Positions 8,901 to 63,576 of a stretch of 64,000 bases of DNA are shown here, in pieces. Location: positions 1 to 64,000 of the forward strand of contig NIVC01002292.1 in assembly GCA_002269645.1 (NCBI GenBank). The letters are read 5' to 3'. Source of the DNA: Macrostomum lignano (Eukaryota). Both the position numbers and the translations under genes were made by a program. Every line of letters starts with the position of its first letter. Within the stretch, counting starts at the first letter, position 1. Under the pieces are notes generated by a model. It was not told the DNA's origin. It did not search any database and saw only the letters and a list, made by a program, of their open reading frames with translations.

Positions 8901-9929
8901 TGAAACTCTCCCAGTCGGCTCTCTTGAAAGACCAGCGAGGGCGCTGGGCTGGGGGTCCTCCGACGCTTCCTGACGGTAAAGCAGATCGGCAGGTGGTCGG
9001 AGCCGAGGTCCTCGTCGACGTGCCAGGAGGAGCGCACGGACACGGTAGGAGGGCCGCGGATCCAGGTCGAGTCCGGGGCGGACTTGCCGCCGGTGCTAGG
9101 GTTAATGCGGGTGGCGACGGCCGGTTTGTTGGCGAGGGACAGTTGCCAGCCCGCGGCCCATTCCTCCAGGGTGGCGCCGCCATCGTCGCTGGGCGCGTCC
9201 GCATCCCAACTGCCATGCGCGTTGAAGTCCCCGCCAATTATACAAACTTGAAACCGGGATTTCGTTGAAGTCCGGGGCCCACGTCTCCCCGGGCCGCTGG
9301 CTGCTGGTGGGTGGGGCATGCACACTGGCCAGCCCGACGTTACCCACGTACCCACGGGCCGTGCACGTGGCGAGGTGGAGCCGCGGGGTTGCTGGAGGCG
9401 ATGTCTTCACGAAGGAGAATGAGCACGCCGCCGCGTGCTGTCGGGGGGCGGCAGCTCGCCGGGTAGGCTTCCTGAGCTGTGGGCCGGGGAGCCGCGGGCG
9501 AGGCGGGACGGTCAGTCTGCGCAGTGCCAGTCGGGACGTTGGTCCTCGCGTCCGTATCAGCACAGCAGGGCGCAGTAGAGGGCGCTCCAGCAGCGACTGC
9601 TGCGCAGCCCGGAGCATCTGAGGTGCAGCCAGCCGGAGCAGCCGTTGCAGAACACCGCCACAAACCGCTTGAAGTTGATGATTTCTCCACAACAGCTGCA
9701 GGTCCAGGTGCTGCAGGTTGAGTGTCATCCTGCTGGCTTTTGCCGGGGTATTGTGTCGGGCCGGCCTTGCTTCGGGCCTTTTGGATAACGCCGCGCTCGA
9801 CCCCGTGCCAAGGCTCATCACGCATAGAACAGGCTGTGCGAGAGGACCGGCATCCTGGACACCAGGCGCCGCGGTCGTCGGGCCAGCGGAGCCGGCAGCG
9901 GGGGCGTTTGACGGTCCGAGTCCGGGCTC
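5908..9929 (-). mobile_element. Non-LTR retrotransposon, I-group (Ingi/I/Nimb-like): PHD-APE-RT-RNaseH-CCHC, frameshifted
   Basis: APE (GGDFNAH...LGSDHLPI, about 8900-9260); RT (LRPIALNSCIAK, LLDFKRAYNRV, YINDL, HADD); RNase H (FVWVPDCAGLEGNEAADTAA); C-terminal DTVEHLLRLCP; (GAA)n 3' tail at about 5908-5919. Candidate TSD AAGATTTAAACT (5896-5907) vs AAGACTTAAACT (9940-9951), 1 mismatch. Confidence 0.9.
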
Positions 9930-10089
9930 AAGACTTAATAAGACTTAAACTGCTGCTGGCGCTGCAACCAAAATCACTAAAATGCCGTCAGCTAAAAGAA
10001 TAAAGAGACAGCGCCAAGAGGAACTGAAGGAGGCAGCCAAGTGATCCAGAAAATTAACTGATTGGTCTTGCCTAGGGAATACGAGTACA

Positions 10090-10600: not shown

Positions 10601-11015
10601 TTAGGCCTAATCGAGTCGCGCAATGTTTGAGTCAGTTGAAAATTCGAGCGTTTTCAGACTTTTGACCACTTCCAACACATAATTGAAATTGAACTAATGG
10701 CCTGGTTGTCACAATGTCACAACCTGACATAACATCAGGAGTTTAGGGTGCCCTTATATTACAAAAATGTATGTGCAATGTGCCCAGCTCCCACCAATAG
10801 CCCCCCCCCCCACTTTGAAATATGTTCCGACACCGCTGTACATCACCTACCCCCACGAAATAACACTAGCAATATGCAATAGAACGTATGGAAAAACAAG
10901 AACTGTCGATTATTCTATAAAATATTCTTGGCTCTACTTATTGATTTTTCGCAATTTGGTTTTGACCTGCGCTCTCTTTCGGGACTCCTTGGAACAGAAG
11001 TTGAAAGAAGTTCAT

Positions 11016-11823
11016 TCGCGCGAGCTCATCAACACCAAAGACAACACACAAATCTATCAGCATGGACAGCCGCTACCCATGTCCCACTCACCAATCCATT
11101 CGCGCGAGCTCATCAACACCAAAGACAACACAAATCTATCAGCATGGACGGCCGCTACCCATGTCCCACTCACCAATCCATTCGCGCGAGCTCATCAACA
11201 CCAAAGACAACACAAATCTATCAGCATGGACGGCCGCTACCCATGTCCCACTCACCAATCCATTCGCGCGAGCTCATCAACACCAAAGACAACACACAAA
11301 TCTATCAGCATGGACAGCCGCTACCCATGTCCCACTCACCAATCCATTCGCGCGAGCTCATCAACACCAAAGACAACACAAATCTATCAGCATGGACAGC
11401 CGCTACCCATGTCCCACTCACCAATCCATTCGCGCGAGCTCATCAACACCAAAGACAACACACAAATCTATCAGCATGGACAGCCGCTACCCATGTCCCA
11501 CTCACCAATCCATTCGCGCGAGCTCATCAACACCAAAGACAACACAAATCTATCAGCATGGACAGCCGCTACCCATGTCCCACTCACCAATCCATTCGCG
11601 CGAGCTCATCAACACCAAAGACAACACAAATCTATCAGCATGGACAGCCGCTACCCATGTCCCACTCACCAATCCATTCGCGCGAGCTCATCAACACCAA
11701 AGACAACACAAATCTATCAGCATGGACAGCCGCTACCCATGTCCCACTCACCAATCCATTCGCGCGAGCTCATCAACACCAAAGACAGCACACAAATCTA
11801 TCAGCATGGACAGCCGCTACCCA
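11016..11823 (+). repeat. Tandem minisatellite, 82/84-bp unit, about 9.8 copies
   Basis: Unit TTCGCGCGAGCTCATCAACACCAAAGACAAC(AC)ACAAATCTATCAGCATGGACAGCCGCTACCCATGTCCCACTCACCAATCCA; unit lengths 84,82,82,84,82,84,82,82,82, then a partial unit. Confidence 0.95.
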
Positions 11824-13581
11824 TTAAGCTACTCGCTTTCAAATCAGCAGCCCTCTGCCCAACAGTTTCTATCTATCAGCTATTTATCAGCGACGAGAAA
11901 TTCAAGCTTGAAAATTGGTGGCCAATCGTGCAGGAAACTGTGCTCGAATCTGTGGCTACATCACTCAGCTCACTTGGTTCGGGCACACTACCAACAACCT
12001 GTTGACTGATGCAGCTGAGTTGATTGCCTCGGACCTGGCGGTAGGTTGGCAGAAATTTTAACAATCGCTATCTGCAATCGACAATTCTGTCATTGATCAC
12101 GGGATGCCAGTTGGCGGAGATGCAGGACAAGGCGAATTCGCTGACAGCCGCTGCCGAAACCGCCGATGTCAGAGCAGGTGCAGTCTGGCGTGCGATCTGC
12201 TGTAAACTTCTGACTATAGAAGAACAGCTGGGCACGGTGCGGTATTCCATGTGACTTCAGTTGACCCTGCGTTATTTACTGTTGTATGCATTGTATAGAG
12301 AAGTACCTGTAAAACTCGCTCACGCTAATATTAATAATACTGAAAAAATAAAAACCTATACATAGATTCTTACTGTTGTATAATTTTGTCTCTTGCATGA
12401 TTGCGTGGACCATTGGACAATTGGACTATTTAGTATCTCAGGAAAAAGTAAACGAAAGAGGTGCGCAGGCCCAATGACAGCTTCAACATGCTCTCTCAAT
12501 TTGTAATTGGGACTTTGGTGAGAGGCGGACCAACAAGTACCTACATATAAGCACTCGTGCGTAGGTCGTTCTCGAGTCGGGGACCTGTTACGGCTCATTC
12601 GTACCACTCATTCCTCAATACGGCATTCGCTGGGAAGTTTAGCAGCACTGCATGGAATCATGAAATTTGACGCAGGTTTCCCCTTCATGACATGTCATTA
12701 AGTTAATTTTGGCAATCACATTAGTTTCTTAAACATGTATGTATTTAAGCAAATGCAAACTGTTCTCTTCAGCATGTAACAACGGCAACAATAGTAACAA
12801 AAATACGCTGTCATAGAGAGTTCTTAAAGACAGCAGCGTCACATGGTTGGGTGCCTGCAGCGTCAGCGCCTTCTGTACCGGCTGTGGGCAGTTGATGTTG
12901 CCTGCCAGCTGGAGTTACCGATGGCGCACGGTTGCTAACACACGTAACGACCCAGTAATGTGGGAACATAAAAACTAATTCCATTAATAATTTAGCCTGT
13001 TAGGAAGTTTCGAATACAATCGGACGTATTTACAAAAAAATGAAAAAAATTAGCATAGCTTTACTTGAGCAACACTCTAACAGAATAAACTAAAAATAAA
13101 TGTGTAATTAATTATTCGACACAAACGGATTCGAGCGATCAAAAGAAAGCATAAAAATCTGTGTTGAATGGTATGGACCAACTGGTTAAGTTTATAACTG
13201 GCCACTAATACGAGAGAGAGGCTGCTGCTAGCATTTCTGCGTCGGAATCAACAACCCCAGGGCATTGTTTTATTAAGACTGTAAACTTTTGGCTTACCAA
13301 AAGAGAAGAGCTTTTACCTGAGAGTTTCTATGGCCATTATTGGCTTTTTGGTAATTTTTTTGAGTGTCTCCTATAGCTTATATGGCTCGGCTGAAGAAAA
13401 TAGCGGGTCGCTAAACCAGACCATTTCAATCGGAATCACCCGTCAGAGAAGGGACCACAGACTTGAAATTCCCGACTTAACTAACACAAGCAATATCAAT
13501 TTTGAGTTTAGGACATTCAGGGCTGGTGAAGACAAGCAATCGAGAATCAGTGTCAGTTCAAGCCGAGAACTTGGCAGGGAG

Positions 13582-16446
<2,865 letters not shown>

Positions 16447-18446: not shown

Positions 18447-19757
18447 TAAACCGCCCCCGCACCCATCCGCCCGCAACCCCATCCGCCCTCGACCCCATCC
18501 GCCCCCGACCCCATCCTCCGCCCTCGACCCCATCCGCCCCCGACCCCATCCGCCCGCAACCCCATCTGCCCCCGACCCCATCCTCCGCCCTCGACCCCAT
18601 CCGCCGCCCTCGACCCCATCCGCCCTCGACCCCATCCGCCGCCCTCGACCCCATCCGCCCCGACCCCATCCGCCCCCAACCCCATCTGCTCACAGACACC
18701 GACCCCCCCCCAGAATCTATCCACCCAGACCCCGATCCCCCAGAATATATCCGCCCTAAACCCCGATCCCCCCAGAATCTATCCGCCCCAAACCCCGATC
18801 CCCCCAGAATCTATCCGCCCTAAACCCCGATCCCCCCAGAATCTATCCGCCCCAAACCCCGATCCCCCCAGAATCTATCCGCCCTAAACCCCGATCCCCC
18901 CAGAATCTATCCGCCCTAAACCCCGATCCCCCCAGAATCTATCCGCCCCAAACCCCGATCCCCCCAGAATCTATCCGCCCTAAACCCCGATCCCCCAGAA
19001 TCTATCCGCCCCAAACCCCGATCCCCCAGAATCTATCCGCCCTAAATCCCGATCCCCCAGAATCTATCCGCCCTAAACCCCGATCCCCCAGAATCTATCC
19101 GCCCCAAACCCCGATCCCCCCAGAATCTATCCGCCCTAAACCCCGATCCCCCAGAATCTATCCGCCCCAAACCCCGATCCCCCCAGAATCTATCCGCCCC
19201 AAACCCCGATCCCCCCAGAATCTATCCGCCCCAAACCCCGATCCCCCAGAATCTATCCGCCCCAAACCCCGATCCCCCAGAATCTATCCGCCCTAAACCC
19301 CGATCCCCCCAGAATCTATCCGCCCCAAACCCCGATCCCCCAGAATCTATCCGCCCTAAACCCCGATCCCCCAGAATCTATCCGTCCCAGACCCCGATCC
19401 CCCAGAATCTATCCGTCCCAGACCCCAATCCCAGAATCTATCCGTCCCAGACCCCGATCCCCCAGAATCTATCCGTCCCAGACCCCGATCCCCCAGAATC
19501 TATCCGTCCCAGACCCCGATCCCCCAGAATCTATCCGTCCCAGACCCCAATCCCAGAATCTATCCGTCCCAGACCCCGATCCCCCAGAATCTATCCGTCC
19601 CAGACCCCGATCCCCCAGAATCTATCCGTCCCAGACCCCAATCCCAGAATCTATCCGTCCCAGACCCCGATCCCCCAGAATCTATCCGTCCCAGACCCCA
19701 ATCCCAGAATCTATCCGTCCCAGACCCCGATCCCCCAGAATCTATCCGTCCCAGACC
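18447..19757 (+). repeat. C-rich compound minisatellite: about 14-20-bp GACCCCATCCGCCC units, then 29-32-bp CCCCGATCCCCC(C)AGAATCTATCCG(C/T)CC units
   Basis: Read directly: short-unit block about 18447-18690, long-unit block about 18700-19757 (more than 30 copies). Confidence 0.95.
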
Positions 19758-23883: not shown

Positions 23884-24134
23884 AAAAGCCGGGACTGACT
23901 CTAGCAAGCTAAACTGCTACTGCAAATCCCTCATATCTAGTCCGATTGCCAATGCAGAGAAGACTTGTAGCAGCAGTCGACTTTCGGGTCCTAGCATTGC
24001 AGAATAAAACAAAACAACTTGATGCGCAGTGTATGAAAATCATTCTAAATTCTTGAGTTTTGACTTGCTCTTTTGAATTATTGAATACATGTAGTTGAAG
24101 TTTGAACTTAGAGAGGTGAGAATATGGAGTGGTG

Positions 24135-24866
24135 TGAGCATGAAGTGGTGTGAGCATGGAGTGGGTGAGCATGGGGTGATGTGAGCATGGGGTGATGTGA
24201 GCATGGAGTGATGTGAGCATGGAGTGATGTGAGCATGGAGTGGGGTGAGCATGGAGTGATGTGAGCATGGAGTGATGTGAGCATGGAGTGGGGTGAGCAT
24301 GGAGTGATGTGAGCATGGAGTGATGTGAGCATGGAGTGGGGTGAGCATGGAGTGATGTGAGCATGGAGTGGGGTGAGCATGGAATGATGTGAGCATGGAG
24401 TGATGTGAGCATGGAGTGGGGTGAGCATGGAGTGGGGTGAGCATGGAGTGATGTGAGCATGGAGTGATGTGAGCATGGAGTGATGTGAGCATGGAGTGAT
24501 GTGAGCATGGAGTGATGTGAGCATAAAGTGGGGTGAGCATGGAGTGATGTGAGCATGGAGTGATGTGAGCATGGAGTGATGTGAGCATGGAGTGATGTGA
24601 GCATGGAGTGATGTGAGCATGGAGTGGGGTGAGCATGGAGTGATGTGAGCATGGAGTGATGTGAGCATGGAGTGGGGTGAGCATGGAGTGATGTGAGCAT
24701 GGAGTGATGTGAGCATGGAGTGGGGTGAGCATGGAGTGATGTGAGCATGGAGTGATGTGAGCATGGAGTGGGGTGAGCATGGAGTGATGTGAGCATGGAG
24801 TGATGTGAGCATGGAGTGATTTGAGCATGGAGTGATGTGAGCATGGAGTGATGTGAGCATGGAGTG
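24135..24866 (+). repeat. 16-bp minisatellite GAGCATGGAGTG(AT/GG)GT, about 45 copies
   Basis: Read directly; it explains the repetitive minus-strand ORFs 23909-24860. Confidence 0.97.
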
Positions 24867-27800
24867 AGGGTGGGTGGGTATTCTCTATTGTTCCCGGGTG
24901 GAGGTAGATGCTTGTTTTGAATTTAATTTAAAAAGCCCTGCGAAGTGTCTAATTTTGTAGCAACATTATAGTTATATACTTGTACATGTAGTTGAACTCT
25001 CAGACATTGCAACATTGGCCTGTTGGTCTAGAAAAATTTCCGCACCAGGCTACTCATCAGTAGCTGACAGAGCTTTAGCCGAAGCCGAGAAAGGCCGATC
25101 GGATTTGTCCCAGTCCAGAAAGTGAGGGCAACGAAGGCCAGAGGATGCAACAGCTGCGCAGTTCTGCTGCAAAAAAGAAGATGCAGAGTTTGTCCGCCCC
25201 CGCCCGCCGCCGCACGCATTTGCCACCAGCGACATGGCAGTTTCGCCCATCCACCAGTTGGCTAAAATTAGCCTGCCGTCAAATTCGGACGATATCCGTT
25301 GAAGTGAGTGACAGTTTTGGACTGCAGGCGCGCGCTGCGATTGAGTTGCCGAGGCTCTGCGTTGCAAAAAAACTGCGGATTGCAAAACAGCGCGTAGAAC
25401 GCAGAGAAGCAGAGAAGCAGAGAGCATCAGCTACATTTGAAGCCCCGACCGGGCTGCATCAGATTTCAGTAGGAGATTTCACACTTTGAAACAGGAGTGA
25501 ATTTGAGAATCGGATCGCTACTTGTTTAGAAACAACGAGCAAAAGTTTTGCAGAATTGCGCGGCAGAGTTGGCTGTCCGAAAATAGAAAGGCGCGTTTTA
25601 TTGTCAAGAAGCCGCTACATCGCAGCTGAAGGAAGGCTGCGCGCGATAAAAGACAGGAAACGTTTCCTAGAAAAACATTCCTGCTTAACATCTGGTCGGA
25701 TTAAGCAGCTTCCGTTGCTGTAAACCCAGAGCCGTCCCTGCCAGTGCATCAAATGCAGTCAGCTGCAATTGCCGCCCAAACAGCCACCGCCACCCTCCGC
25801 AAAGAGATAAAGGGTTCGGCGGCAGCAGTAGGCATTACGAGGCGAAATGAAATGCGTTTCGGCCACGAAGGAGTTCGCACGAAAATTGCCCCAAATATTG
25901 GGATTTTATTTCCCGTAGCTGCGCGAGACCCAAATCAGCATCGCTAGTCGAATCTGACACAGCCGCGGCCTCGGTGGCCTCCCTTCCCCCAGCTGACCTT
26001 TCCCTCGCAGATCCCGCGGTGAATGAACGGAACCAAGTGGGCAGCGGCAGCGGAAGGGAGAGGACGGACTTTGCCTGGATTTACAACAAGCTTCAACCGC
26101 TGTTACTGCCGATGCCGAGGGAAATGTAGATGCGTTGGCAAGGGAAGAGAGTGCTTGACTGCCGAAGGCTGCCCCTGGCCGCTCTGGATGATGGCTAAGC
26201 CAGGCCGACTGCATAAACAAATGCTGCAAACGGGCCGAGGCAGAGAAGGGAAGGCAGAGTGGAGTGGGGCGGTGGGGAAGCTGCACTCGAGTTTCAGCCA
26301 CAGCAACGGTGGATCGCTGGCGTTTTTCTACCCTTCCTGCAGTGTTGCGGCCTCCTCCAAGCCAAAGTCCCTCGAGGGGAAAAAGGGCGACCCTTCAATC
26401 CTGCCCCCAGCCTGCGGGCTACGGGGACGAAGTGATTAGGGGGGCTCAGGGAGGCCGCGCTGCGGAGATGGGGCTGTTTAAGGGGCTCTCCAGTGCTGCA
26501 GTCCAGCTTGGCTCTCTGCCAGGTCGCTGCTGACTTCACCAGCTGGTCTCCGCTCGGAAGGGGGGGGGGGTTGCAGATAAGCCTTCGCACTCTGGCTGCA
26601 CCGTGGCTGGAACCTCGCTGCAGCTTGGAGTGACAGAGGCCGGGACTGCTTGGCTCGATGAAGACAGACTGTAATCGATCAAGCAGCTTTCTTCAAGATT
26701 TTTGACAGCCACTCTCCAATTCAAATCATCTGCGCCATGCGCAACTGAAGTAGAGGGACAATGCACTGGGCAAATCATGCGGAATCCAATGTAGGCCGGG
26801 TTTACAGCATAAGGCATTAGCGATAAATATAAGTTTTCAGCCTTCTCACCCTTCTGAACTTCTGAATAGCCAATGGAGAAGTATTCACTTTGTCTGAGGT
26901 TGACTGACGAACTTCTCGAGATAAATCATTGTTTGTCGAAGGCCAGAAGCACAAAATATTCCAGTTGCGTTCTCTAAAGAAAGGTTTGTACCAAGCATAA
27001 GCTCCATCGTCGTGGATTTTTTTGATGAGCGCCTACTAGCTTTCAGAAGGGAACTCATTCCGGAAGCTTTACTTTTCAGAATGTCGTGCAAACAGGAAAA
27101 TTTGCGTCCCCCCACTTGATTGCACTCTCCATATTGCAGATTGTATTTTATTGCCAAACAGATCAGCCCTGATTCTGCACTGCAAACAAGTGCGGAAAAT
27201 ACAAATTCCAAAAGTACAGAACAGCGATAGACATGGCAGATCAACAGCGCAGAAGTTTTGTGAAATTTCACATCGAATCCATGCAGATTATTCACCAGAT
27301 AGCTTTATTTTTGTTCTGGCCTGAAGCTGAGTTGGAAGACCAAAAATATGCTGACAAAAAGTTTGATCGAATCGAGAGCGCCGGATTTTGGGGGCCGGAT
27401 TACAGGAAAATAAAGCCGCATTAATGGAACGAAAACACGCGGAAGTTTAGATAAAATATTGTCGATGTTCACCCGCTTTCGCTGTTCCTTCCGGTGTCAA
27501 ACATTGAGAAGGACGCGAGGATCGAAAGTTGTTGTTCTAACAGACAGTTTTGCGCTTCATCTCTATGGAAGAAAACATTGCTCAAACTTGAAAATTAAGT
27601 GGAACGCCTTATGCTTTAAAATTGTAGCCTTCACTTTTCTGCTTAAATTTTCTAATTTTACGCGATTTCTCGGATTCTTTTACTCGTAGTTTTCTTCCAC
27701 GGAAAAGCGTAATTTTACACAGAAATAAACAAAAATGTTCAGCGAAAATAAAAAGCTACTTCAAGCAAATTCAGAAAATAATACTGCCCCGGCTTGAGGC

Positions 27801-46923: not shown

Positions 46924-48630
46924 TTAAAAGCTTTCTCTGCTTTCTGTCTGATGTACCAGATCACCAGCCGATAGTTTCCGCAACTGTCGAGCTCCACGAT
47001 TGTACAGCTGCACTGCTCTACCGCACTTTCTTACAAAAGCCTCAATGCTGGAGTGAATACGAGTTTCCTTTGGTCGCGGGTCCTTGACAGTCCCTGGCAG
47101 GTCACTATGAAGCATACGGTCGAGAGCCATCTTCGCCGGGCTTGGAAAGCCGCTGCCGACTGGTGTGTTGCGGTAGTGAAGCAAATGCCAGCTCCAGACT
47201 TTGGCCTGTCTCGGAGAATTTCTTCAGCATGCTTTTGGCTACGCTGGACTTTGAAATTCTGTGTTCCACCTTGAACTCAGCCATTTTCTGTCGAAACTCC
47301 CGAGCAGAAAACTGCGGACCTCCATCACTGCCATGACTAGCAGTTTCTCTGGCGCTCCAAAGTTTTGAAAATCATCCCGTATGACATTCGCCACAGCCAA
47401 GCTAGTAGTTGATCTCATCCGTGTGACACTCATCCAGCGGCTGTAGGAGCCAACGCACACCAATTTAGTAGGATCCACCAGTGAACTCAAACAGATTCGT
47501 CAAACAAATTTTGAACGGAAAATTCGGCCCATCCACAGCCATCAACGGTTCTTTGGACTGAGTCCTCATATTCCGCTGGCCAGCACGATTCAAATTCACT
47601 AGCCACCTACTCCACGCTGGCCAGCACGATTCAAATTCACGAGCCACCTACTCCACGCTGGCCAGCACGATTCAAATTCACTAGCCACCTACCTCCACGC
47701 TGGCCAGCACGATTCAAATTCACTAGCCACCTACCTCCACGCTGGCCAGCACGATTCAAATTCACTAGCCACCTACCTCCACGCTGGCCAGCACGATTCA
47801 AATTCACTAGCCACCTACCTCCACGCTGGCCAGCACGATTCAAATTCACTAGCCACCTACCTCCACGCTGGCCAGCACGATTCAAATTCACTAGCCACCT
47901 ACCTCCACGCTGGCCAGCACGATTCAAATTCACTAGCCACCTACCTCCACGCTGGCCAGCACGATTCAAATTCACTAGCCACCTACCTCCACGCTGGCCA
48001 GCACGATTCAAATTCACTAGCCACCTACCTCCACGCTGGCCAGCACGATTCAAATTCACTAGCCACCTACCTCCACGCTGGCCAGCACGATTCAAATTCA
48101 CTAGCCACCTACCTCCACGCTGGCCAGCACGATTCAAATTCACTAGCCACCTACCTCCACGCTGGCCAGCACGATTCAAATTCACTAGCCACCTACCTCC
48201 ACGCTGGCCAGCACGATTCAAATTCACTAGCCACCTACCTCCACGCTGGCCAGCACGATTCAAATTCACTAGCCACCTACCTCCACGCTGGCCAGCACGA
48301 TTCAAATTCACTAGCCACCTACCTCCACGCTGGCCAGCACGATTCAAATTCACTAGCCACCTACCTCCACGCTGGCCAGCACGATTCAAATTCACTAGCC
48401 ACCTACCTCCACGCTGGCCAGTAGAAACAGTCCTTAGCCTTCAGATCCATTTTCACGATGCCAGTGTGCCTCGCATGCAGAATTTTAAGCACCGATTTTT
48501 GGGCGCGGAAATCCCAAAAAGGCTTCAGATCGTCTGCAAGGGCCATAGCTATAAAGCTAGGAGAGGAAAGATCGGGACCAGGATCGCGAGAACCAGTGTC
48601 GGGTCCACGATTTTTCCCGGAGGTCATGAC
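46924..48630 (-). mobile_element. Degraded Ty3/Gypsy-type integrase relic
   Basis: LHARHTGIVKM..AKDCFYWP (zinc-finger region), QSKEPLMAVDGPNFPF..LFEF, SDGGPQFSAREF..EHRIS, YNRGARQLRKLSAGDLV. Stops, frameshifts and deletions; LTRs not confidently located. Confidence 0.75.
47574..48420 (+). repeat. 42-bp tandem repeat, about 20 near-identical copies
   Basis: Unit CTAGCCACCTACCTCCACGCTGGCCAGCACGATTCAAATTCA; no spacers between units. Confidence 0.97.
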
Positions 48631-53554: not shown

Positions 53555-54840
53555 GGAAGGTGGAGAGGCAGATTCTCAGGCACTGAGGGGGAGCGGAGAG
53601 GCAGACTCTCAAGCACTGAGGGAGAGTGGAAAGGCAGATTCTCAGGCACTGAGGGAGAGCGGAAAGGCAGATTCTCAGGCACTGAGGGAGAAGCAGATTC
53701 TCAAGCACTGATGGAGAGGCAGATTCTCAAGCACTGAGGGAGAGCGGAGAGGCAGATTCTCAGGCACTGAGGGAGAGCGGAGAAGCAGATTCTCAGGCAC
53801 TGAGGGAGAGCGAAGAGGCAGATTCTCAGGCACTGAGGGAGAGCGAAGAGGCAGATTCTCAGGCACTGAGGGAGAGCGGAAAGGCAGATTCTCAGGCACT
53901 GAGGGAGAAGCAGATTCTCAAGCACTGATGGAGAGGCAGATTCTCAAGCACTGAGGGAGAGCGGAGAGGCAGATTCTCAGGCACTGAGGGAGAGCGGAGA
54001 AGCAGATTCTCAGGCACTGAGGGAGAGCGAAGAGGCAGATTCTCAGGCACTGAGGGAGAGCGAAGAGGCAGATTCTCAGGCACTGAGGGAGAGCGGAAAG
54101 GCAGATTCTCAGGCACTGAGGGAGAAGCAGATTCTCAAGCACTGATGGAGAGGCAGATTCTCAAGCACTGAGGGAGAGCGGAGAGGCAGATTCTCAGGCA
54201 CTGAGGGAGAGCGGAGAAGCAGATTCTCAGGCACTGAGGGAGAGCGAAGAGGCAGATTCTCAGGCACTGAGGGAGAGCGAAGAGGCAGATTCTCAAGCAC
54301 TGAGGGAGAGCGGAGAGGCAGATTCTCAGGCACTAAGGGAGAGCGGAGAGGCAGATTCTCAGGCACTGAGGGAGAGGCAGATTCTCAAGCACTGAGGAGA
54401 GCAGAGGCAGATTCTCAAGCACTGAGGGAGAGCAGAGGCAGATTCTCAAGCACTGAGGGAGAGCAGAGGCAGATTCTCAAGCACTGAGGGAGAGCGGAGA
54501 GGCAGATTCTCAAGCACTGAGGGAGAGCAGAGGCAGATTCTCAGGCACTGAGGGAGAGGCAGATTCTCAAGCACTGATGGAGAGCGGAGAGGCAGATTCT
54601 CAAGCACTGAGGGAGAGCAGAGCAGATTCTCAAGCAATGAGGGAGAGCGGAGAGGCAGATTCTCAAGCACTGAGGGAGAGCGGAGAGGCAGGTTCTCAAG
54701 CACTGAGGGAGAGCGGAGAGGCAGGTTCTCAGGCACTAAGGGAGAGCGAAGAGGCAGATTTTCAGGCACTGAGGGAGAGCGGAGAGGCAGATTTTCAGGC
54801 ACTGAGGGAGAGCGGAGAGGCAGACTCTCAAGCACTGACT
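53555..54840 (+). repeat. 33-bp minisatellite (GGCAGATTCTCAGGCACTGAGGGAGAGCGGAGA) with shorter variants and a 217-bp higher-order period
   Basis: Read directly; identical ORFs recur at 53675/53892 and 53701/53918, offset by 217 bp. Confidence 0.95.
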
Positions 54841-55614: not shown

Positions 55615-56370
55615 CACTCATCCTCAGTTGCTGGTTAAACCTCCAAAATCCTCAGTTGCTGAGCCAGCCTCCCAGATCCTAGGTTGCTGAGCCAGCCTCC
55701 CAAATCCCCAGTTGCTGGAACAGCCTCCCAGATCCTCAGTTGCTGGGCCAGCCTCCCAGATTCTCAGTTGCTGGGCCAGCCTCCCAGATTCTCAGTTGCT
55801 GGGCCAGCCTCCCAGATCCTCAGTTGCTGGGCCAACCTCCCAGATCCTCAGTTGCTGGGCCAGCCTCTCAGATTCCCAGTTGCTGGGCCAACCTCCCAGA
55901 GTGTCAGTTGCTGGGCCAGCCTCCCAGAGTGTCAGTTGCTGGGCCAGCCTCCCAGATCTTCAGTTGCTGGGCCAGCCTCCCAGAGTGTCAGTTGTTGGGC
56001 CAGCCTCCCAGGATGTCAGTTGCTGGGCCAGCCTCCCAGATCCCCAGTTGCTGGGCCAGCCTCTCAGATCCTCACTTGTTGGGCCATGCAACCTCCCAGA
56101 TTCCCAGTTGCTGGGCCAGCCTCCCAGATCCCCTGTTGCTGGGCCAGCCTCCCAGATTCTCAGTTGCTGGGCCAGCCTCCCAGAGTGTCAGTTGCTGGGC
56201 CAACCCCCCAGATCCTCAGTTGCTGGGCCAGCCTTCCAGAAGGTCAGTTGCTGGGCCAGCCTTCCAGAAGGTCAGTTGCTGGGCCAGCCTCCCAGATCCC
56301 CAACTGCTGGGCCGGCCTTCCAGATCCCCAGTTGCTGGGCCAGCCTCCCAGATCCCCAGTTGCTGGGCCA
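55615..56370 (+). repeat. 28-bp minisatellite CAGTTGCTGGGCCAGCCTCCCAGATCCT, about 27 copies
   Basis: Read directly; it explains the three overlapping ORFs 55684-56447. Confidence 0.95.
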
Positions 56371-57117: not shown

Positions 57118-60100
57118 ATGCCGGATCCGTTGGTAAGTTGATAATTAAATGGATATTAAATGGATATTGCACTGGTTTTAATATGGAGTGGATCAATCAC
57201 TCGCATGGATGGAGGCATATCATATTTTTGGGTCTCATTTCTGTGGCTCTTGTCTATATATTGATGAGCCGATCGACTGACTTTTCGTGATGATTCGATC
57301 ACGGAGATGTTACACTTGCAGAAAATGGTGTTATAAAGTGGAGAATTTCGAGTAAGAATCTTCCGAATGTTTTGGGATCGCGCTCTGAGGATTTGAATAA
57401 AATTTTAAGTCCACCTATTTTTCAAGATTCGCTGAGTCAATTTATAGTTCGGCTGATCTCAAAGAGCCAGCAGAGATTGCTATGAGGCGAGGGGGTGAAG
57501 GGATAGCCAAGCTTCTTGCTTGATTTTTACAAGGGTTTATTTCTAGCATTCCCCCCAAAGTCTTTCCCATTGAATATATTTCCTTAGCACACTACTGCTC
57601 CCAATTGGTTGAGACTGAGACCGAATCTCCTGCTGGTTAGAGCACTCGCATTGGTTGGTATAGCATTCAGAGCCAGAGGGATTACATGATCACTCAATCG
57701 GATGCAAACGCAGGCACATGTCATGAGAGAGATTCATGCATCTAGAGTACGTAGGTCCTCACTCTCGTCGTTAGGCATCGCACACATTCCATAGCTTCGA
57801 GTTTGACTACCCATGGGTGGGAATGGCACCTGTTTATAGGTGTTAACCCAGGGGATTTTGTATCAGTCCGGATCTCAGAAAACTGCTGCATACCTGTGAT
57901 ACAGATGCCCTATTATTAACCACGTGTTTAAAAAACCCCTATTTGCTTCAGTCCCAGACCAGCGAGATCGCAGAGAAGCTGAAGGAGGGAAACTACGGTC
58001 TGCTGTTGGATCTCGTAGCCAAGGAGGACCTGACCCCGTCAGACTGCAGGGCGGTCCTGGCTGAATGCGCCGGGACTCCCGGCGGTCTGCGCGCGAACTG
58101 CGCCAAGAGCTTCGAGCTGCTGATTGACCGGTCAGCTTGCGAGCTTCACAGTGCCGATGAGAACGGGGACAGCCTCGCCCATCTGGCCGCCCGGCATGGC
58201 AACTTGATGTTGCTGGCTCTGCTCCCGGCTGAAATCAAATTCCAGACCAACAACAAGGGACTCACGCCATTTATGGAGGCCGCCCAATCCGGGAAGACCC
58301 GCTGTGCGAAGCACTTGATGCACCTGTTCAGGCAGACACACCTGGCCAGCAACTGGCAGGCAGTTCTGTGCAAAAATAACTCGGAAGGTCGGACGGCGCT
58401 GGACATGGCTGAGGAGTGCGGCTGGCACGAGTTGGCCAAGATAATTGAGGCGTGAGTGAGGCAGCATATAATATAAAGAATCCGATTTTTAAATGTTAAA
58501 ACAGTTTGATAAATACTTGTACACCGATCATTTTAGTGAACTGAAGTTACTTGAGAACGGCCTGACGCCCCAGGTGAGTGTTCAAAAACTTGCTTGCAGA
58601 TTAATTTAGCATCCTTAGACTAATGAACGGCTATAGTTTGTACTTTTAAAAATCGTGGTGCCAAGCGGACACGTTGTCAAAATGTCAATTTTGGAGTTGC
58701 CATTAATTGTCATTACACACTTGCGTGACAATGACGATTCGAGGCACATGCGAGCGTAAACATGATTGTGTGCTCAGTGCTTGAGCCTGTGGCAAGCGTC
58801 TAAAGTCCTTAATCCCCAAAAATTGTCTAATATACGTACCTTCCAGCAAGAGCGAATTCGCAAACAGCTGGAGCAGCTCGCCCTTGCTGGCAATCTCGCC
58901 GAGCTCAAGCTGCTGGCCACCAGCGCCAACTGCGACTTGCCCGACGGTGCCGGCAAGACTGCGCTGATGCGAGTCTCCGAGTGCAAGTCAGCCGGCCTTG
59001 AGGTGCTGAAGCTCCTGGCAGGTCTTGGCGACCCCACGGCACCTGACGCCAACGGCTGGAGCAGTCTGCACTCGGCCGCCGCAGCCGGCTGGGAGGGCGC
59101 GATGTGGGCGCTCGCCGACTCCGGGGCGGCCGTGAACTGCGGCGACCACCGCAACTGGACGGCCCTCATGCAGGCGGCCAGCCGCGACCACGTGGACAGC
59201 GTCAGGGCGCTGCTTCGGCTTGGCGCCAACTGGGAGCTGCGAGACAACAGCGGGAGCACCGCGTTGTACTATGCTGATAGGAACTGCTGCAAGCAGACCT
59301 CCGTACTGCTGGGCCAGTGAGAACTCTCTATTTGTTATCTTGTTGTGTGCTGCAATTTTTCTATTTTACTACAACACCTAGACTCGCTAAATGACGCCCC
59401 AAGGTTCGCGGATAAATCATTCTTCAAGGAGAAGCTGCGAGTTCACCCGTGAGAAATTTGCTCTTTGATCTGTTACAAGCCATTACGAGCCACGATGCTG
59501 TTTTCACGGATGATGAAATGCCCTCTTTTTCAGGCTTCTGGCTAGCGCAGACTCTGCAACTCTGCCTACAATGAGGTCTTTTAACAACCGTCCGACTCTG
59601 CCGGTTCGTGCTCCAGGTAACAGCGGTATTAAGCAGCAAGAAGGCTCAAGGCTTGATCTGAACAGCAAGCTGGATGCACTTAATGCAGCTGCTGCAATGC
59701 AAGCAAAAGAGACGCCGGTGGCAGCTGGTGAAGTATCAATGGAAACAGAAGCAGCAAAACCAACGGAGAGTAGCACGGTTCCGAAAGTGGAATGGTGAGT
59801 TGCATTGCAGATGGTTTTTTATAATTTGTTAGTCATTTCTAACTTAACCGAAATCAGTTTGTTTGGTGTTTAATTGGTGACAGAAGACCCTCAGGCAGCG
59901 AACTGGAAGATCAAATTGCTTTTCATACCCTGAGCATTGAGCTTACACACAATACACAATGAGCTTACCCTTGCAGCAAGTCCGTCATGAAGAGCATAAA
60001 ATTCGGCGAAGAGATCGGTCGGGGCGCATTCGGAACTGTTTGCCGGGCCACTCTGCCGAACAGCCCGACCGAGTACTGCGCCAAGTTCATTAACTTGCCC

Positions 60101-62345
60101 TTCCACGACACAGACGGAAAGGACGTCAGAAATCACAAAGTCGCAGACAATATCAAGGCTGAACTGAATCTGTGCGGACTGAAACACGAAAACATTGCAA
60201 AATTTGTTGAAATATGCTACAATGCCGATAGCCTGCAGATCACTGTTGTGATGGAGCGCGTCTACGGTAAAACGCTGAAAAATTTTCTTAATGGAGAACC
60301 TGTTCAAATCGAAGTGAACCGAAAGCTAACAACCCAGGTGAGACTTGCCTAGATTTGAAAGTTAGAGAAGAATTTCATTTTAAACTCTCAAGTGGAAACC
60401 CTGCTTACAGATCTGCAGCGCTCTACAGTATATGCACAGCATGGGTGTTGTTCACCGGGACATCAACGGCAACAACATCCTTATAGATGGAAATAAACTG
60501 GTGAAGCTTATCGACTTTGGTCTGTCTCGCAGGCTGTGCGAATCGGACACGCACTGCCTGGAGAGCAGCACGATGCCGAAAGGGACTCTCCACTTCCTGG
60601 CTCCGGAGAGATTCGGCGGAGACGACCAGGAGGGCGGCAGCTCCGGTCGAATCTGCCCCAAATCGGACGTCTGGGCCCTCGGTTGCATCGTGTACTACAT
60701 GGCAAATGGCAGAGTGCCGTATGACAACATAAAAAGCTTCGTGCATCTTGGCAGCAAAATTTCAACGTTCGGCGCTCCTTCACTGGCGAGTTCACCGGAG
60801 ACATGCGACATCAACATGATAGATTTTTACGGCTGCTGTACAGACAAGAATTACAAAACTCGAAAGTCGTCAGCTGAGCTGCTCAAGCATCCATTTATCG
60901 TGTGCAGTACGTGCAGATTAAGTTGTTGAATCAATTTAAATATTTTAGTATATACTAGGTTTAAGTATAGCAAACCTTTAGTTCACTAAGGGGATGGGGT
61001 GAGTAGCAAAGCGCTAAAACACGTCATACCTGATGACGAGAGTGTCCGGGCCGCTCAAAGCTCTCAGGATGTACCTGCGTGTGTTAAGATCTACTTTGAT
61101 CCTAATTTGCGGTTGCACTCAAAGGTTCTCTTGCGATCGCAGACTATTAAACTCATACTCATCAGTAGCTGTCACTAGCTGACTATATAGTTTAGGCCCT
61201 GCTTCTAGTACAGATATTAATTGGAAAACTGATGACAATCATTTCATCCAAACGAAATAAAAAAATTTTAGATTCTGACCATTTGGCCGTAAAAAGTCAG
61301 AATAGCAATGACGATGACAATGAGAAAGGCAGCGGTCCAGACGGAGGCGATTGCAAGCGCAGGCCAAATGCAGGCCACGGAGATGGCACAAATGATCCCA
61401 GAGGAGCCGCTTCTAATGACGGAGGTGGTCGAGGCGGGCCAAGTGGCAGCTCTGAAGGCAGCATATTGAATAACCCCGGAGCCGTTGCGTCTCAGAGGTT
61501 GGTCCCTGACAGACTAAAAGTATATTTGATATATTTGCATCACCAGAAGAACAAATCGCTATTGCAGAACCGCTGAAGACGACGACCGATACCCAGTGAC
61601 GTCTCCGCGACGGGGTGTTTGTCTAATAATCAACGTTGAAAAGTATGACAGGAGGTCACTCCTCGAGGATCGGGAAGGATCTCGCTTGGACGTAGATAGG
61701 CTATCAACACTGTTCTCAAAGATGGCTTATAATGTCCAGTTGGCGGAAAATCCAACTAGTCAGGAGATGCCGGAACAAGTTCACGCGGCTTCAGTTGAAT
61801 TTGGCCGTTCCAACCTCGGCTGCTTTGTGTGCGTCATCATGGCTCACGGCTCTAGTGGGGAAGTCTATGGAAGCGATGGAGAATCCGTAGGCTTAGAATC
61901 AATTATGCGGCCTCTGTACCCTGTTCACTGCACCAGTCTGCTCAACAAGCCAAAAATTTTCATTATTCAAGCGTGTCGTGGATTTAATGCTGACGAGTCG
62001 CGCTTTACATCAAATCGCACGGAAGATTCCAGATTCAGCCCTTATAAAAAAGATTTTCTGGTCTGCCATTCAAGCACTAAGGGCGAAACAGCCCATCGGG
62101 ATCGGTATAATGGCTCACTGTTCGTACAGACATTCTGCGACGTCATTCGTGACCGGTTTCGTCACGATCATCTGACGGACATTATGGCCAATGTAAACTG
62201 CAGACTAATGAAGGCTCAATCTTCAGCTCGGCATGGGTTCGATGATATTGTTGTATCCGAGTACTGCTCGACCCTGACAAAGAAGTGCTACCTGGATTCT
62301 GATATAGTAACAGATGTAAGGGTTAATTCTGAGGAGGACATGTAG
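57118..62345 (+). CDS. Ankyrin-repeat + Ser/Thr protein kinase + caspase fusion protein, 9 exons, about 1047 aa
   Basis: Exons 57118-57132 (tentative), 57952-58451, 58537-58573, 58847-59316, 59534-59794, 59977-60337, 60411-60906, 61272-61497, 61568-62345. All introns are GT-AG with matching phases (0,2,0,2,2,0,1,2), 3144 nt in total. ANK motifs (GDSLAHLAA, GLTPFMEAA, GWSSLHSAA, NWTALMQAA); kinase (IGRGAFGTV, YCAK, HRDINGNN, DFG, LAPE, DVWALG); caspase (RGVCLIIN, REGSRLD, MAHG, QACRG, DFL...AHR...GSLF). Confidence 0.8.
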
Positions 62346-63246: not shown

Positions 63247-63576
63247 ATGTCCTCATCTGACCGTAACATCGACCGGAAATGCGACGAAGTTCGCAGTAAA
63301 ATCGAAGCCAAGCTGCAAGCCTCCGGCGAGCAGGACCGGATCCGGCGCCACATCCGGGCGGCTCTGAACAGCTCGGGCTGGATGGACGAAGTGAAAAGCC
63401 AGTGCCGAGATCTCATCCGGGCCAAAGGGGTCGAGTACTGCACTGTGGAGGAAATTGTCGAGGCGGTGCTGCCGCAGGCCAGAGAGCGGGTGCCGAAGGA
63501 GCTCAAGCAGGAGGTGCTGGACCTGCTATGGAAGTTTGTCGACACGCACGACATTGGACTTGGAGATGACTGCTGA
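63247..63576 (+). CDS. ENY2: ENY2/Sus1 (SAGA DUB module and TREX-2 subunit), intronless, 109 aa
   Basis: IEAKLQASGEQDRIRRHIRAALNSSGWMDEVKSQCRDLIRAKG...TVEEIVEAVLPQARERVPKELKQEVL matches the ENY2 family pattern. Confidence 0.9.
   Translation: MSSSDRNIDRKCDEVRSKIEAKLQASGEQDRIRRHIRAALNSSGWMDEVKSQCRDLIRAKGVEYCTVEEIVEAVLPQARERVPKELKQEVLDLLWKFVDTHDIGLGDDC

What the first reader, a model, noticed from the sequence alone, without database searches (positions are those of the whole stretch)
57118..62345. Single gene fusing ankyrin repeats, a Ser/Thr kinase and an apparently active caspase
Seen: the separate ORFs (57943, 58766, 59571, 59987, 60432, 61232, 61596) each end or begin at a canonical splice site just inside their apparent stop. 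Eight GT-AG introns join them in matching phases into one 1047-aa frame: two ANK blocks, linker, kinase, Gly/Asp-rich linker, caspase. Established: caspase catalysis uses the His of (A/S)HG and the Cys of QACRG, and P1-Asp specificity uses two Arg plus Gln. All are present (REGS, AHG, QACRG, AHR), with Asp sites in the p20/p10 linker (NADE, TEDS) and upstream (AEDDD). Animal caspases normally carry CARD/DED prodomains. ANK+kinase occurs in RIPK4/ANKK1/DAPK, but I do not recall ANK+kinase+caspase in one chain. Inference: a self-contained sensor-kinase-protease module for cell death or innate immunity, in which ANK-driven oligomerisation activates the caspase and cleavage could release the kinase.
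Basis: partly seen in the sequence, partly recalled or inferred. Interest (0 to 1): 0.93.

Follow-up and report, generated by a model that had tools for sequence, protein, structure and literature searches.

The report
Flatworm ankyrin-kinase-caspase fusion gene
This is a real gene of the flatworm Macrostomum lignano that puts ankyrin repeats, a protein kinase and an intact caspase in one 1062-residue chain; it is already in GenBank, a 2024 caspase survey reports such a kinase-prodomain caspase in this species, and its function has never been tested.

Summary

One 45-nt exon (59404-59448) was missed. With it, the 10-exon, 1062-aa product is identical to GenBank PAA59155.1 (BOX15_Mlig018903g1, Macrostomum lignano). 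That annotation was built from RNA-seq, with gene boundaries cut at trans-splice and poly(A) sites.

Two near-identical copies of the gene keep all 18 splice sites and the open frame.

Exon-by-exon comparison shows the gene is a paralogue of M. lignano ankyrin-prodomain caspases. A phase 2-2 kinase cassette (exons 6-9) sits between the prodomain and the protease. M. lignano also has ANK-kinase and kinase-pseudocaspase-ANK-caspase relatives.

The architecture is not new. It has been public since 2017, and a 2024 Genome Biol Evol paper reports an M. lignano caspase with a kinase-like prodomain, sister to flatworm ANK caspases.

The function is untested. The most likely role is an initiator-type caspase recruited through its ankyrin domain; that is inference. 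Interest is moderate.

The parts
57118..57132 (+). Coding exon 1 (MPDPL), includes the start codon; phase 0 donor GTAAGT
   Evidence: matches the N-terminus of PAA59155.1
57952..58451 (+). Exon 2: first ankyrin block (about 3 repeats counted by eye); ends in phase 2
   Evidence: Pfam Ank models. Positional homologue of the 524-nt phase-2 exon 2 of ANK-caspase gene Mlig009621g1
58537..58573 (+). Exon 3: 37-nt connector (ELKLLENGLTPQ); ends in phase 0
   Evidence: Homologue of the 25-nt phase-0 exon 3 of Mlig009621g1
58847..59316 (+). Exon 4: second ankyrin block (about 5 repeats counted by eye); ends in phase 2
   Evidence: Pfam Ank_2/Ank/Ank_5 best stretches at aa 258-332. ANK region 56-348 is 39.7% identical over 305 aa to the M. 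lignano ANK-caspase prodomain
59404..59448 (+).
   Evidence: Needed for identity with PAA59155.1. Present in all three RNA-based models and skipped in the three older predicted models. Homologous to the 42-nt exon FQGKDFFSTDVEPS in Mlig009621g1
59534..59794 (+). Exon 6: linker 1, no Pfam domain; first exon of the phase 2-2 'kinase cassette' (exons 6-9)
59977..60337 (+). Exon 7: kinase N-lobe. G-loop GRGAFG at 60017-60034, beta3 Lys479 at 60083-60085, alphaC Glu505 at 60161-60163
   Evidence: Pfam Pkinase; TTK alignment; coordinates
60411..60906 (+). Exon 8: kinase C-lobe. HRDINGNN at 60453-60476, DFG at 60513-60521, APE at 60600-60608
61272..61497 (+). Exon 9: Gly/Asp/Asn-rich linker 2; last exon of the kinase cassette; ends in phase 2
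   Evidence: No indels in three copies, against 18 gap columns in the adjacent intron 8
61568..62345 (+). Exon 10: AEDDD (61572-61586), then the whole caspase domain and the stop codon. Arg839 at 61671-61673, His897 at 61845-61847, QACRG at 61968-61982, NADE at 61986-61997, TEDS at 62019-62030, Arg981 at 62097-62099
   Evidence: Pfam Peptidase_C14; PDB caspase-3/6/7 at E about 2e-29; catalytic columns; coordinates

Best explanation
Shown here:
- Window 57118-62345 (+) is the Macrostomum lignano gene BOX15_Mlig018903g1 (PAA59155.1). It has 10 coding exons and encodes 1062 aa.
- Domain order is about 8 ankyrin repeats, a roughly 100-aa linker, a eukaryotic protein kinase, a roughly 90-aa Gly/Asp-rich linker, then a caspase.
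- The kinase has a G-loop, beta3 Lys, alphaC Glu, HRD, DFG and APE. Its catalytic loop is atypical (HRDINGNN).
- The caspase has an intact His/Cys dyad and an intact P1-Asp pocket.
- The gene is a paralogue of M. lignano's ankyrin-prodomain caspases. Exons 2-5 match theirs in order, size and phase. A phase 2-2 cassette (exons 6-9) carrying a kinase sits where those genes have an 18-aa acidic exon.
- The kinase belongs to a family seen here only in M. lignano proteins. Other members are ANK-kinase proteins and kinase-pseudocaspase-ANK-caspase proteins.

Inferred mechanism (about 0.3-0.4):
- It acts as a long-prodomain, initiator-type caspase.
- The ankyrin solenoid recruits the protein to a partner or to related ANK-kinase and ANK-caspase proteins.
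- Proximity, possibly helped by kinase-domain dimerisation and autophosphorylation, dimerises the caspase.
- The caspase then autoprocesses at the intersubunit Asp (TED|S), and perhaps at AEDDD|R, which would free p20/p10 from the ANK-kinase part.

The biological output (apoptosis, immune or stress death signalling) is unknown.
For: Gene model:
- The frame is intact and all junctions are GT-AG.
- The product is identical to PAA59155.1.
- That GenBank annotation derives solely from a genome-guided RNA-seq assembly (StringTie/TACO). Transcripts were cut at experimentally mapped trans-splice and poly(A) sites, and ORFs were called by TransDecoder (PMC5730564).
- The same pipeline keeps the same-strand neighbours as separate genes: cyclophilin upstream and EnY2 about 0.9 kb downstream.

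Conservation across the three copies:
- All 18 splice sites and the frame are kept.
- Substitutions are 1.3% in exons and 1.8-2.3% in introns.
- The only exon indel is 6 nt.
- pN/pS is about 0.4.
- In copy g3 the junction is annotated across a 2.97-kb transposon insertion in intron 9.

No independent caspase start:
- Exon 10 has no Met upstream of the caspase domain.
- The in-frame intronic ATG at 61232 is destroyed in g3.

Domains and catalytic residues.

Origin:
- The ANK region is 39.7% identical over 305 aa, and the caspase 34.5% identical, to ANK-caspases P0171/P0290.
- Exon sizes and phases are 500(2)/37(0)/470(2)/45(2) here against 524(2)/25(0)/488(2)/42(2) in Mlig009621g1.
- ANK plus kinase aligns collinearly with the ANK-kinase P0145.
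- Kinase plus caspase aligns with P0133 in a single HSP.

Literature: PMC11463336 places an M. lignano kinase-prodomain caspase as sister to ANK caspases.
Against: - I could not inspect RNA-seq reads or cDNA. The transcript evidence is second-hand, through the deposited annotation.
- About 7% of assembled M. lignano transcripts are multi-gene precursor mRNAs with several trans-splice sites. Shorter isoforms cannot be excluded, for example one starting at Met 59987 in exon 7, or one skipping exons 6-9 in frame.
- The kinase catalytic-loop Lys is replaced by Asn (HRDINGNN), so activity is not assured.
- Between g1 and g2/g3 the caspase domain has 9-10 nonsynonymous against 3 synonymous changes. 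Several lie in the intersubunit linker. The counts are too small to tell relaxed constraint from noise.
- No orthologue outside M. lignano was found, so there is no deep conservation.
- There are no functional data at all. Every mechanistic step is inference from how long-prodomain caspases work.
Confidence: 0.8

Rival explanations
1. Annotation chimera. Two or three adjacent same-strand genes (ANK protein, kinase, caspase) are co-transcribed as a precursor. They were merged by the transcript assembler and by in-frame splice-site picking, and the mature mRNAs are separate.
For: About 7% of assembled M. lignano transcripts are multi-gene precursors resolved by SL trans-splicing (PMC5730564). 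PMC11463336 itself warns that, for the annelid caspases with unusual prodomains, artificial chimeric gene predictions cannot be ruled out. I could not view reads.
Against: - All nine junctions are in frame.
- Exon 10 has no initiator Met before the caspase fold, and the only intronic candidate ATG is lost in copy g3.
- The TBONE pipeline cut transcripts at trans-splice and poly(A) sites, yet left this unit whole in three loci while separating the EnY2 gene 0.9 kb away.
- The exon structure of the ANK half is homologous to ANK-caspase genes that run straight into a caspase.
- Independent kinase-caspase and ANK-kinase fusions exist at other M. lignano loci.
Confidence: 0.07
2. It is a single gene, but the kinase is a non-catalytic or atypical scaffold (a pseudokinase-like dimerisation or docking module). 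The protein would then be functionally an ANK-caspase with a bulky regulatory insert.
For: The catalytic loop reads HRDINGNN, or HRDINCxN in the whole family, where the Ser/Thr-kinase consensus is HRDLKxxN (the consensus is from general knowledge). In sister proteins the caspase domain next to the kinase has lost its Cys, so domain inactivation is common in this family.
Against: The G-loop, beta3 Lys, alphaC Glu, HRD Asp, catalytic-loop Asn, DFG and APE are all present. Kinase-domain pN/pS is the lowest of all regions in the two comparisons against the window copy (0.18-0.23).
Confidence: 0.2
3. The copies are redundant and drifting after recent polyploidy. The ORF is still intact, but the fusion has no selected function.
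For: The three copies are 97-98% identical, from recent genome duplication. Caspase-domain pN/pS is about 0.9-1.0 between g1 and g2/g3. No orthologue was found in other species.
Against: - Overall pN/pS is about 0.4.
- There are no frameshifts or stops in 3 x 3.2 kb.
- All catalytic residues and splice sites are retained.
- ANK, kinase and caspase are each only 34-40% identical to their nearest paralogues. The fusion is therefore far older than the polyploidy and has stayed intact.
Confidence: 0.06

Closest known systems
[quoted passage not shown]
   Same: Same species and same kinase-prodomain caspase concept. The paper places it as sister to flatworm ANK caspases, which agrees with my ANK and caspase similarity to M. 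lignano ANK-caspases. It is very probably this gene or one of its copies.
   Different: The accession is not given in the text I could read, and no supplements are held. The paper does not mention the N-terminal ankyrin repeats. It states that ANK caspases are restricted to parasitic flatworms. It reports no gene structure, catalytic-site analysis or paralogue family.
Platyhelminth ANK caspases (ankyrin-prodomain caspases; first noted in Schistosoma, per PMC11463336)
   Same: The N-terminal ankyrin prodomain and C-terminal active caspase are shared. Against the M. lignano ANK-caspases (PAA56209.1, PAA82384.1, PAA90489.1), ANK is 39.7% identical over 305 aa and the caspase 34.5% identical. Four consecutive exons match in order, size and phase.
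   Different: This gene has a roughly 455-aa cassette (linker, kinase, linker; exons 6-9) between prodomain and protease. Its caspase is encoded by a single exon rather than two. I could not test the relationship to the parasitic-flatworm proteins here.
Other M. lignano fusions: Mlig030125g1 (PAA89054.1) kinase-pseudocaspase-ANK-caspase; PAA70070.1 and PAA94590.1 kinase-pseudocaspase; ANK-kinase proteins (A0A1I8GU44, A0A1I8J2J4, A0A1I8I6V5)
   Same: They share the same kinase family (34-41% identity; HRDINCxN-type loop confirmed in the ANK-kinase and stand-alone members) and homologous ANK modules. The same three domain types recur together.
   Different: The domain order differs. In those proteins the caspase domain adjoining the kinase has lost the catalytic Cys (to H, E or R). 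Here the caspase adjoining the kinase is intact.
Kinase-caspase fusions in other animals: Eisenia andrei (PMC11463336); Alosa pseudoharengus LOC143121611 PYRIN-kinase-caspase; Darwinula stevensoni CARD-caspase-kinase
   Same: A protein kinase and a caspase lie in one predicted chain.
   Different: Similarity is only at the generic domain level (26-32% identity), which suggests independent origins. They have different extra domains (PYRIN, CARD) and no ankyrin repeats. All are computational predictions.
RIPK1/RIPK3-FADD-caspase-8 complexes and ANK-containing kinases (RIPK4, ANKK1, DAPK1)
   Same: By analogy only, from general knowledge: a kinase and an initiator caspase cooperate in one death-signalling assembly, and ANK plus kinase co-occur in one chain.
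   Different: In those systems the kinase and caspase are separate proteins joined by death-fold or RHIM domains. In RIPK4 and ANKK1 the kinase precedes the ANK repeats. This kinase's best solved-structure matches are TTK/Mps1, MAP3K2, MAP2Ks and PAKs, not RIPK or DAPK.

Membership tests
Caspase (peptidase family C14A) | Peptidase_C14 domain covering p20 and p10 | tested here: met
   PF00656 scores 150 bits against a 21.4-bit cutoff, covering profile positions 1-232 of 233. Caspase-3/6/7 structures match at E about 2e-29 over the whole domain.
Caspase (peptidase family C14A) | Catalytic His in (S/A)HG and Cys in QACxG | tested here: met
   MAHG His897 and QACRG Cys940 align with the catalytic columns of caspase-3 and caspase-6 and of 10 other caspases. 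They are conserved in all three gene copies.
Caspase (peptidase family C14A) | P1-Asp pocket (Arg, Gln, Arg) | tested here: met
   Arg839 (REGS), Gln938 and Arg981 (AHRD) occupy the conserved columns.
Caspase (peptidase family C14A) | Asp-directed proteolytic activity and autoprocessing at the intersubunit linker | not testable with these tools
   Only the sequence is available. NAD|E and TED|S lie 6-18 residues after QACRG, and the TED|S Asp is kept as AED|S in g2 and g3.
Active eukaryotic protein kinase | Pkinase fold with G-loop, beta3 Lys, alphaC Glu, HRD Asp, catalytic Asn, DFG and APE | tested here: met
   PF00069 scores 158 bits over the full profile. The motifs are located and aligned to TTK.
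Active eukaryotic protein kinase | Canonical catalytic loop HRDLKxxN (Ser/Thr) or HRDLAARN (Tyr) | tested here: not met
   The loop is HRDINGNN, with Asn in place of the loop Lys. The HRDINCxN variant recurs in M. lignano paralogues. Whether this affects activity is unknown.
Platyhelminth ANK caspases | Ankyrin-repeat prodomain N-terminal to an active caspase domain | tested here: met
   Pfam Ank models plus Peptidase_C14. The ANK region is collinear with M. lignano ANK-caspase prodomains, with homologous exons.
Platyhelminth ANK caspases | Caspase domain groups with the ANK-caspase clade of parasitic flatworms | not tested
PMC11463336 reports a sister-group position.
Platyhelminth ANK caspases | Prodomain consists of ankyrin repeats only, with no second enzyme | tested here: not met
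   A kinase cassette (exons 6-9) lies between the ANK region and the caspase.
RIPK4/ANKK1/DAPK-type ANK kinases | Kinase domain N-terminal to the ANK repeats and most similar to RIPK or DAPK kinases | tested here: not met
   ANK precedes the kinase. The top 60 PDB matches are TTK, MAP3K2, MAP2K4/5/6/7, PAK, SLK, GCN2, PKR and NEK7, with no RIPK or DAPK.
Single transcription and translation unit | Transcript evidence joining the ANK, kinase and caspase exons | tested here: inconclusive
   The evidence is indirect but strong. The product is identical to a CDS from an RNA-seq-only annotation with experimentally defined boundaries. I did not see the reads themselves.

The most novel reading that the evidence does not exclude
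Macrostomum uses a homologous ankyrin module, rather than DED or CARD death folds, as the common recruitment domain of a lineage-specific cell-death or immune signalling network. That network would be built from ANK-kinases, ANK-caspases and kinase-pseudocaspase-ANK-caspases. This tri-domain protein would be its self-contained hub, in which kinase activity or dimerisation directly gates an initiator caspase in cis. That mode of caspase control has not been described in any animal. A corollary: ANK caspases predate parasitism in flatworms, contrary to the 2024 survey.
Probability: 0.2. Interest if true: 0.7.

Novelty: already known. Interest (0 to 1): 0.4.

Why it matters
Caspases are normally controlled in trans, through CARD or DED adaptors. 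A chain that hard-wires a probably active kinase to an intact caspase behind a protein-binding ankyrin solenoid is a natural experiment in kinase-gated protease activation.

M. lignano is transgenic- and RNAi-tractable, so the question is testable.

The added value of this re-analysis is evolutionary:
- The gene is an ANK-caspase with an inserted kinase cassette.
- It links three M. lignano families (ANK-kinase, ANK-caspase, kinase-pseudocaspase) in the manner of a Rosetta-stone fusion.
- A free-living flatworm has ANK caspases, which qualifies the published claim that they are specific to parasites.

The basic discovery is not new. The protein is in public databases and the kinase-caspase fusion is in print.

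Tried and rejected
1. A word-indexed homology search with the caspase domain alone found only 4 distant caspases. A search with a 5-sequence profile found 50 ordinary caspases. Neither retrieved parasitic-flatworm ANK caspases, so I could not test that relationship.
2. A full-length search was swamped by ankyrin proteins, apart from the self cluster.
3. Supplements of PMC11463336 are not held. The preprint text gives no accession for the kinase-caspase. I therefore cannot prove that the published protein is this exact locus rather than a paralogue.
4. A literature search for 'Mlig018903' gave 0 papers.
5. A caspase-only isoform from the in-frame intronic ATG at 61232 is rejected as a conserved feature. 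The ATG is mutated and followed by a stop in copy g3.
6. A scan for AATAAA/ATTAAA after the ANK-exon and kinase-exon stops was uninformative. None lies near those stops, but none lies after the real stop either.
7. Rfam found nothing in the window.
8. The RIPK/DAPK affinity of the kinase is rejected.
9. I did not run a structure prediction. Sequence matches to solved caspases and kinases already settle the folds, and a shallow alignment would not give reliable inter-domain geometry.

Full report
**The observation**

The window is eukaryotic DNA. ORFs in 57.1-62.3 kb on the + strand each stop a few bases past a GT.

Pfam finds several ankyrin models (Ank_2 in three stretches). It also finds Pkinase at 437-711, covering 3-263 of 263 profile positions (E 4.4e-46), and Peptidase_C14 at 804-1029 (E 9.7e-44). 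The kinase match runs straight through the exon 7/8 junction, which validates that junction independently.

The caspase part matches solved caspase-3, -6 and -7 structures at E about 2e-29. In those alignments REGS, AHG, QACRG and AHR fall on the P1-pocket Arg, the catalytic His, the Gln/Cys and the second Arg.

**Identity of the gene**

The best database hit is a cluster of six Macrostomum lignano proteins carrying the same three Pfam families. They show that a 45-nt exon (59404-59448, FADKSFFKEKLRVHP, phase 2-2) was missed.

With that exon the 10-exon, 1062-aa product is identical to GenBank PAA59155.1, BOX15_Mlig018903g1, which lies on a 64.5-kb contig.

The three older gene predictions for this species also skip the micro-exon. 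All three models of the Mlig_3_7 annotation include it.

**Is it one transcript?**

The GenBank annotation of Mlig_3_7 was not made ab initio. It is a genome-guided RNA-seq assembly (StringTie plus TACO plus mapped de novo transcripts). Units were cut into genes by the TBONE pipeline at experimentally mapped trans-splicing and poly(A) sites, and ORFs were called by TransDecoder (PMC5730564).

That pipeline left this unit whole at three loci. At the same loci it separated the same-strand neighbours, a cyclophilin upstream and EnY2 about 0.9 kb downstream.

The two other copies (g2 on NIVC01003551.1, g3 on NIVC01004603.1) are 97-98% identical in DNA.
- They keep all 18 splice sites and an open frame.
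- Substitutions are 1.3% in exons against 1.8-2.3% in introns.
- The only exon indel is 6 nt.
- pN/pS is about 0.4.

In g3 a 2.97-kb element with 127-nt terminal inverted repeats and a 686-aa ORF sits in intron 9, between the linker and the caspase exon. The annotation still joins the two exons.

Exon 10 has no Met upstream of the caspase fold. The only in-frame intronic ATG (61232) is mutated and followed by a stop in g3.

I could not look at reads myself, so this evidence is strong but second-hand. Shorter isoforms cannot be excluded, for example one trans-spliced at exon 7 and starting at Met 59987.

**Where it came from**

An exhaustive HMMER search with the kinase-linker-caspase part returned M. 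lignano proteins as the five best non-self hits and found no orthologue in another species. Pfam scans and name look-ups followed. They show a family seen here only in M. lignano:
- ANK-caspases: PAA56209.1, PAA82384.1, PAA90489.1.
- ANK-kinases: A0A1I8GU44, A0A1I8J2J4, A0A1I8I6V5.
- Tandem kinases.
- Kinase-caspase and kinase-caspase-ANK-caspase proteins: PAA70070.1, PAA94590.1, PAA89054.1.

The present protein aligns with three of these types:
- With an ANK-kinase over ANK (38%) and kinase (38.5%).
- With ANK-caspases over ANK (39.7% across 305 aa) and caspase (34.5%).
- With a kinase-caspase protein in a single HSP spanning both domains.

I reconstructed the exon structure of the ANK-caspase gene Mlig009621g1. 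Phases at the exon ends are in parentheses.

| Gene | Exon sizes in nt (end phase) |
|---|---|
| Mlig009621g1 | 141(0), 524(2), 25(0), 488(2), 42(2), 54(2), 327(2), 484 |
| This gene | 15(0), 500(2), 37(0), 470(2), 45(2), [261(2), 361(0), 496(1), 226(2)], 778 |

Exons 2-5 correspond one to one, including the micro-exon (FADKSFF... against FQGKDFF...). Exons 6-9 form a phase 2-2 cassette carrying the kinase. They occupy the place of an 18-aa acidic exon in the ANK-caspase gene.

The gene is therefore an ANK-caspase paralogue with an inserted kinase cassette. Equivalently, it is the 'Rosetta stone' joining the ANK-kinase and ANK-caspase families.

**State of the enzymes**

All caspase catalytic and P1-pocket residues are intact in the three copies and in the ANK-caspases. 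In the sister kinase-caspase proteins the caspase next to the kinase has lost its Cys, replaced by His, Glu or Arg.

The kinase has a G-loop, Lys479, Glu505, HRD, DFG and APE. Its catalytic loop is HRDINGNN, a variant shared as HRDINCxN by the ANK-kinase and stand-alone kinase paralogues.

Its closest solved relatives are TTK/Mps1 (E 2e-25), MAP3K2, MAP2Ks and PAKs, not RIPK or DAPK.

Between g1 and g2/g3 the caspase domain has 9-10 nonsynonymous and 3 synonymous changes. Several of them lie in the intersubunit linker, and the Asp of TED|S is kept. The numbers are too small to interpret.

**What is already known**

PMC11463336 (Genome Biol Evol 2024) surveyed lophotrochozoan caspases. [quoted passage not shown] For its annelid oddities it cautions that chimeric predictions cannot be ruled out.

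It does not mention the ankyrin repeats of the M. lignano protein, its gene structure or its paralogues.

I found no functional study. The architecture is thus catalogued and published, though only in passing.

**Mechanism (inference)**

Long-prodomain caspases are activated by proximity-induced dimerisation on a platform reached through the prodomain. This is general knowledge of caspase-8 and caspase-9.

By analogy, the ankyrin solenoid would bind a partner, possibly the homologous ANK-kinase and ANK-caspase proteins. The kinase would add dimerisation or phospho-regulation. The caspase would autoprocess at TED|S, and perhaps at AEDDD|R, which would detach it from the ANK-kinase part.

I give this about 0.3-0.4. 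The biological role (apoptosis, immunity, cell turnover) is open.

**Verdict**

The finding is already known at the level of the protein and of the kinase-caspase fusion. This analysis adds three things: the ANK-caspase origin, the family context, and the point that a free-living flatworm has ANK caspases.

Noticed in passing
M. lignano proteins PAA56209.1, PAA82384.1, PAA90489.1 (P0171, P0286, P0287); locus L003 3001-10060: The free-living flatworm M. lignano encodes ANK-prodomain caspases with intact catalytic residues. PMC11463336 states that ANK caspases are restricted to parasitic platyhelminths.
   Followed up: partly
M. lignano proteins PAA89054.1 (P0132), PAA70070.1 (P0281), PAA94590.1 (P0282), and P0133, P0134, P0189: A second fusion type: a kinase followed directly by a pseudocaspase (catalytic Cys replaced by His, Glu or Arg). 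In some proteins ANK repeats and a second, intact caspase domain follow.
   Followed up: partly
L001 10418-13387 (intron 9 of paralogue g3): A 2.97-kb insertion with 127-nt terminal inverted repeats (98% complementary) and a 686-aa ORF, apparently a DNA transposon. It is absent from the window copy and from g2.
   Followed up: partly
window 63247-63576 (+): A 109-aa ORF about 0.9 kb downstream on the same strand. The matching gene in both paralogous loci hits Pfam EnY2 (transcription and mRNA-export factor).
   Followed up: partly
window 55620-56370: A 28-bp tandem array (about 27 copies) roughly 750 bp upstream of the start codon. It is open in all three + frames, which produces spurious 220-240-aa 'ORFs'. 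It is conserved, with length differences, in the paralogous loci.
   Followed up: no
window 11013-11824, 13836-14420, 18707-19757, 24124-24867, 47574-48421, 53562-54838: There are many long minisatellite arrays, with periods of 12-82 bp and up to 49 copies, across the window. This fits the repeat-rich M. lignano genome.
   Followed up: no
window 6001-10000, e.g. ORF 8582-9355 (-): A GC-rich (62-65%) block. One ORF has motifs that look like an endonuclease/exonuclease/phosphatase domain (GDFNAH...SDH), so it is probably a non-LTR retrotransposon fragment.
   Followed up: no
Alosa pseudoharengus LOC143121611 (P0173, XP_076138190.1); Darwinula stevensoni CAG0899406.1 (P0192): Independent predicted kinase-caspase fusions outside flatworms: PYRIN-kinase-caspase in a fish (7 RefSeq isoforms) and CARD-caspase-kinase in an ostracod.
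   Followed up: no
Owenia fusiformis Ras/Roc-caspase (P0142): Its caspase domain is among the closest non-flatworm relatives of this one (36-40% identity). It shares the YPVTSPxGxCLIIN and SKKCxLD motifs, which hints at a lophotrochozoan clade of long-prodomain caspases with swapped prodomains.
   Followed up: no
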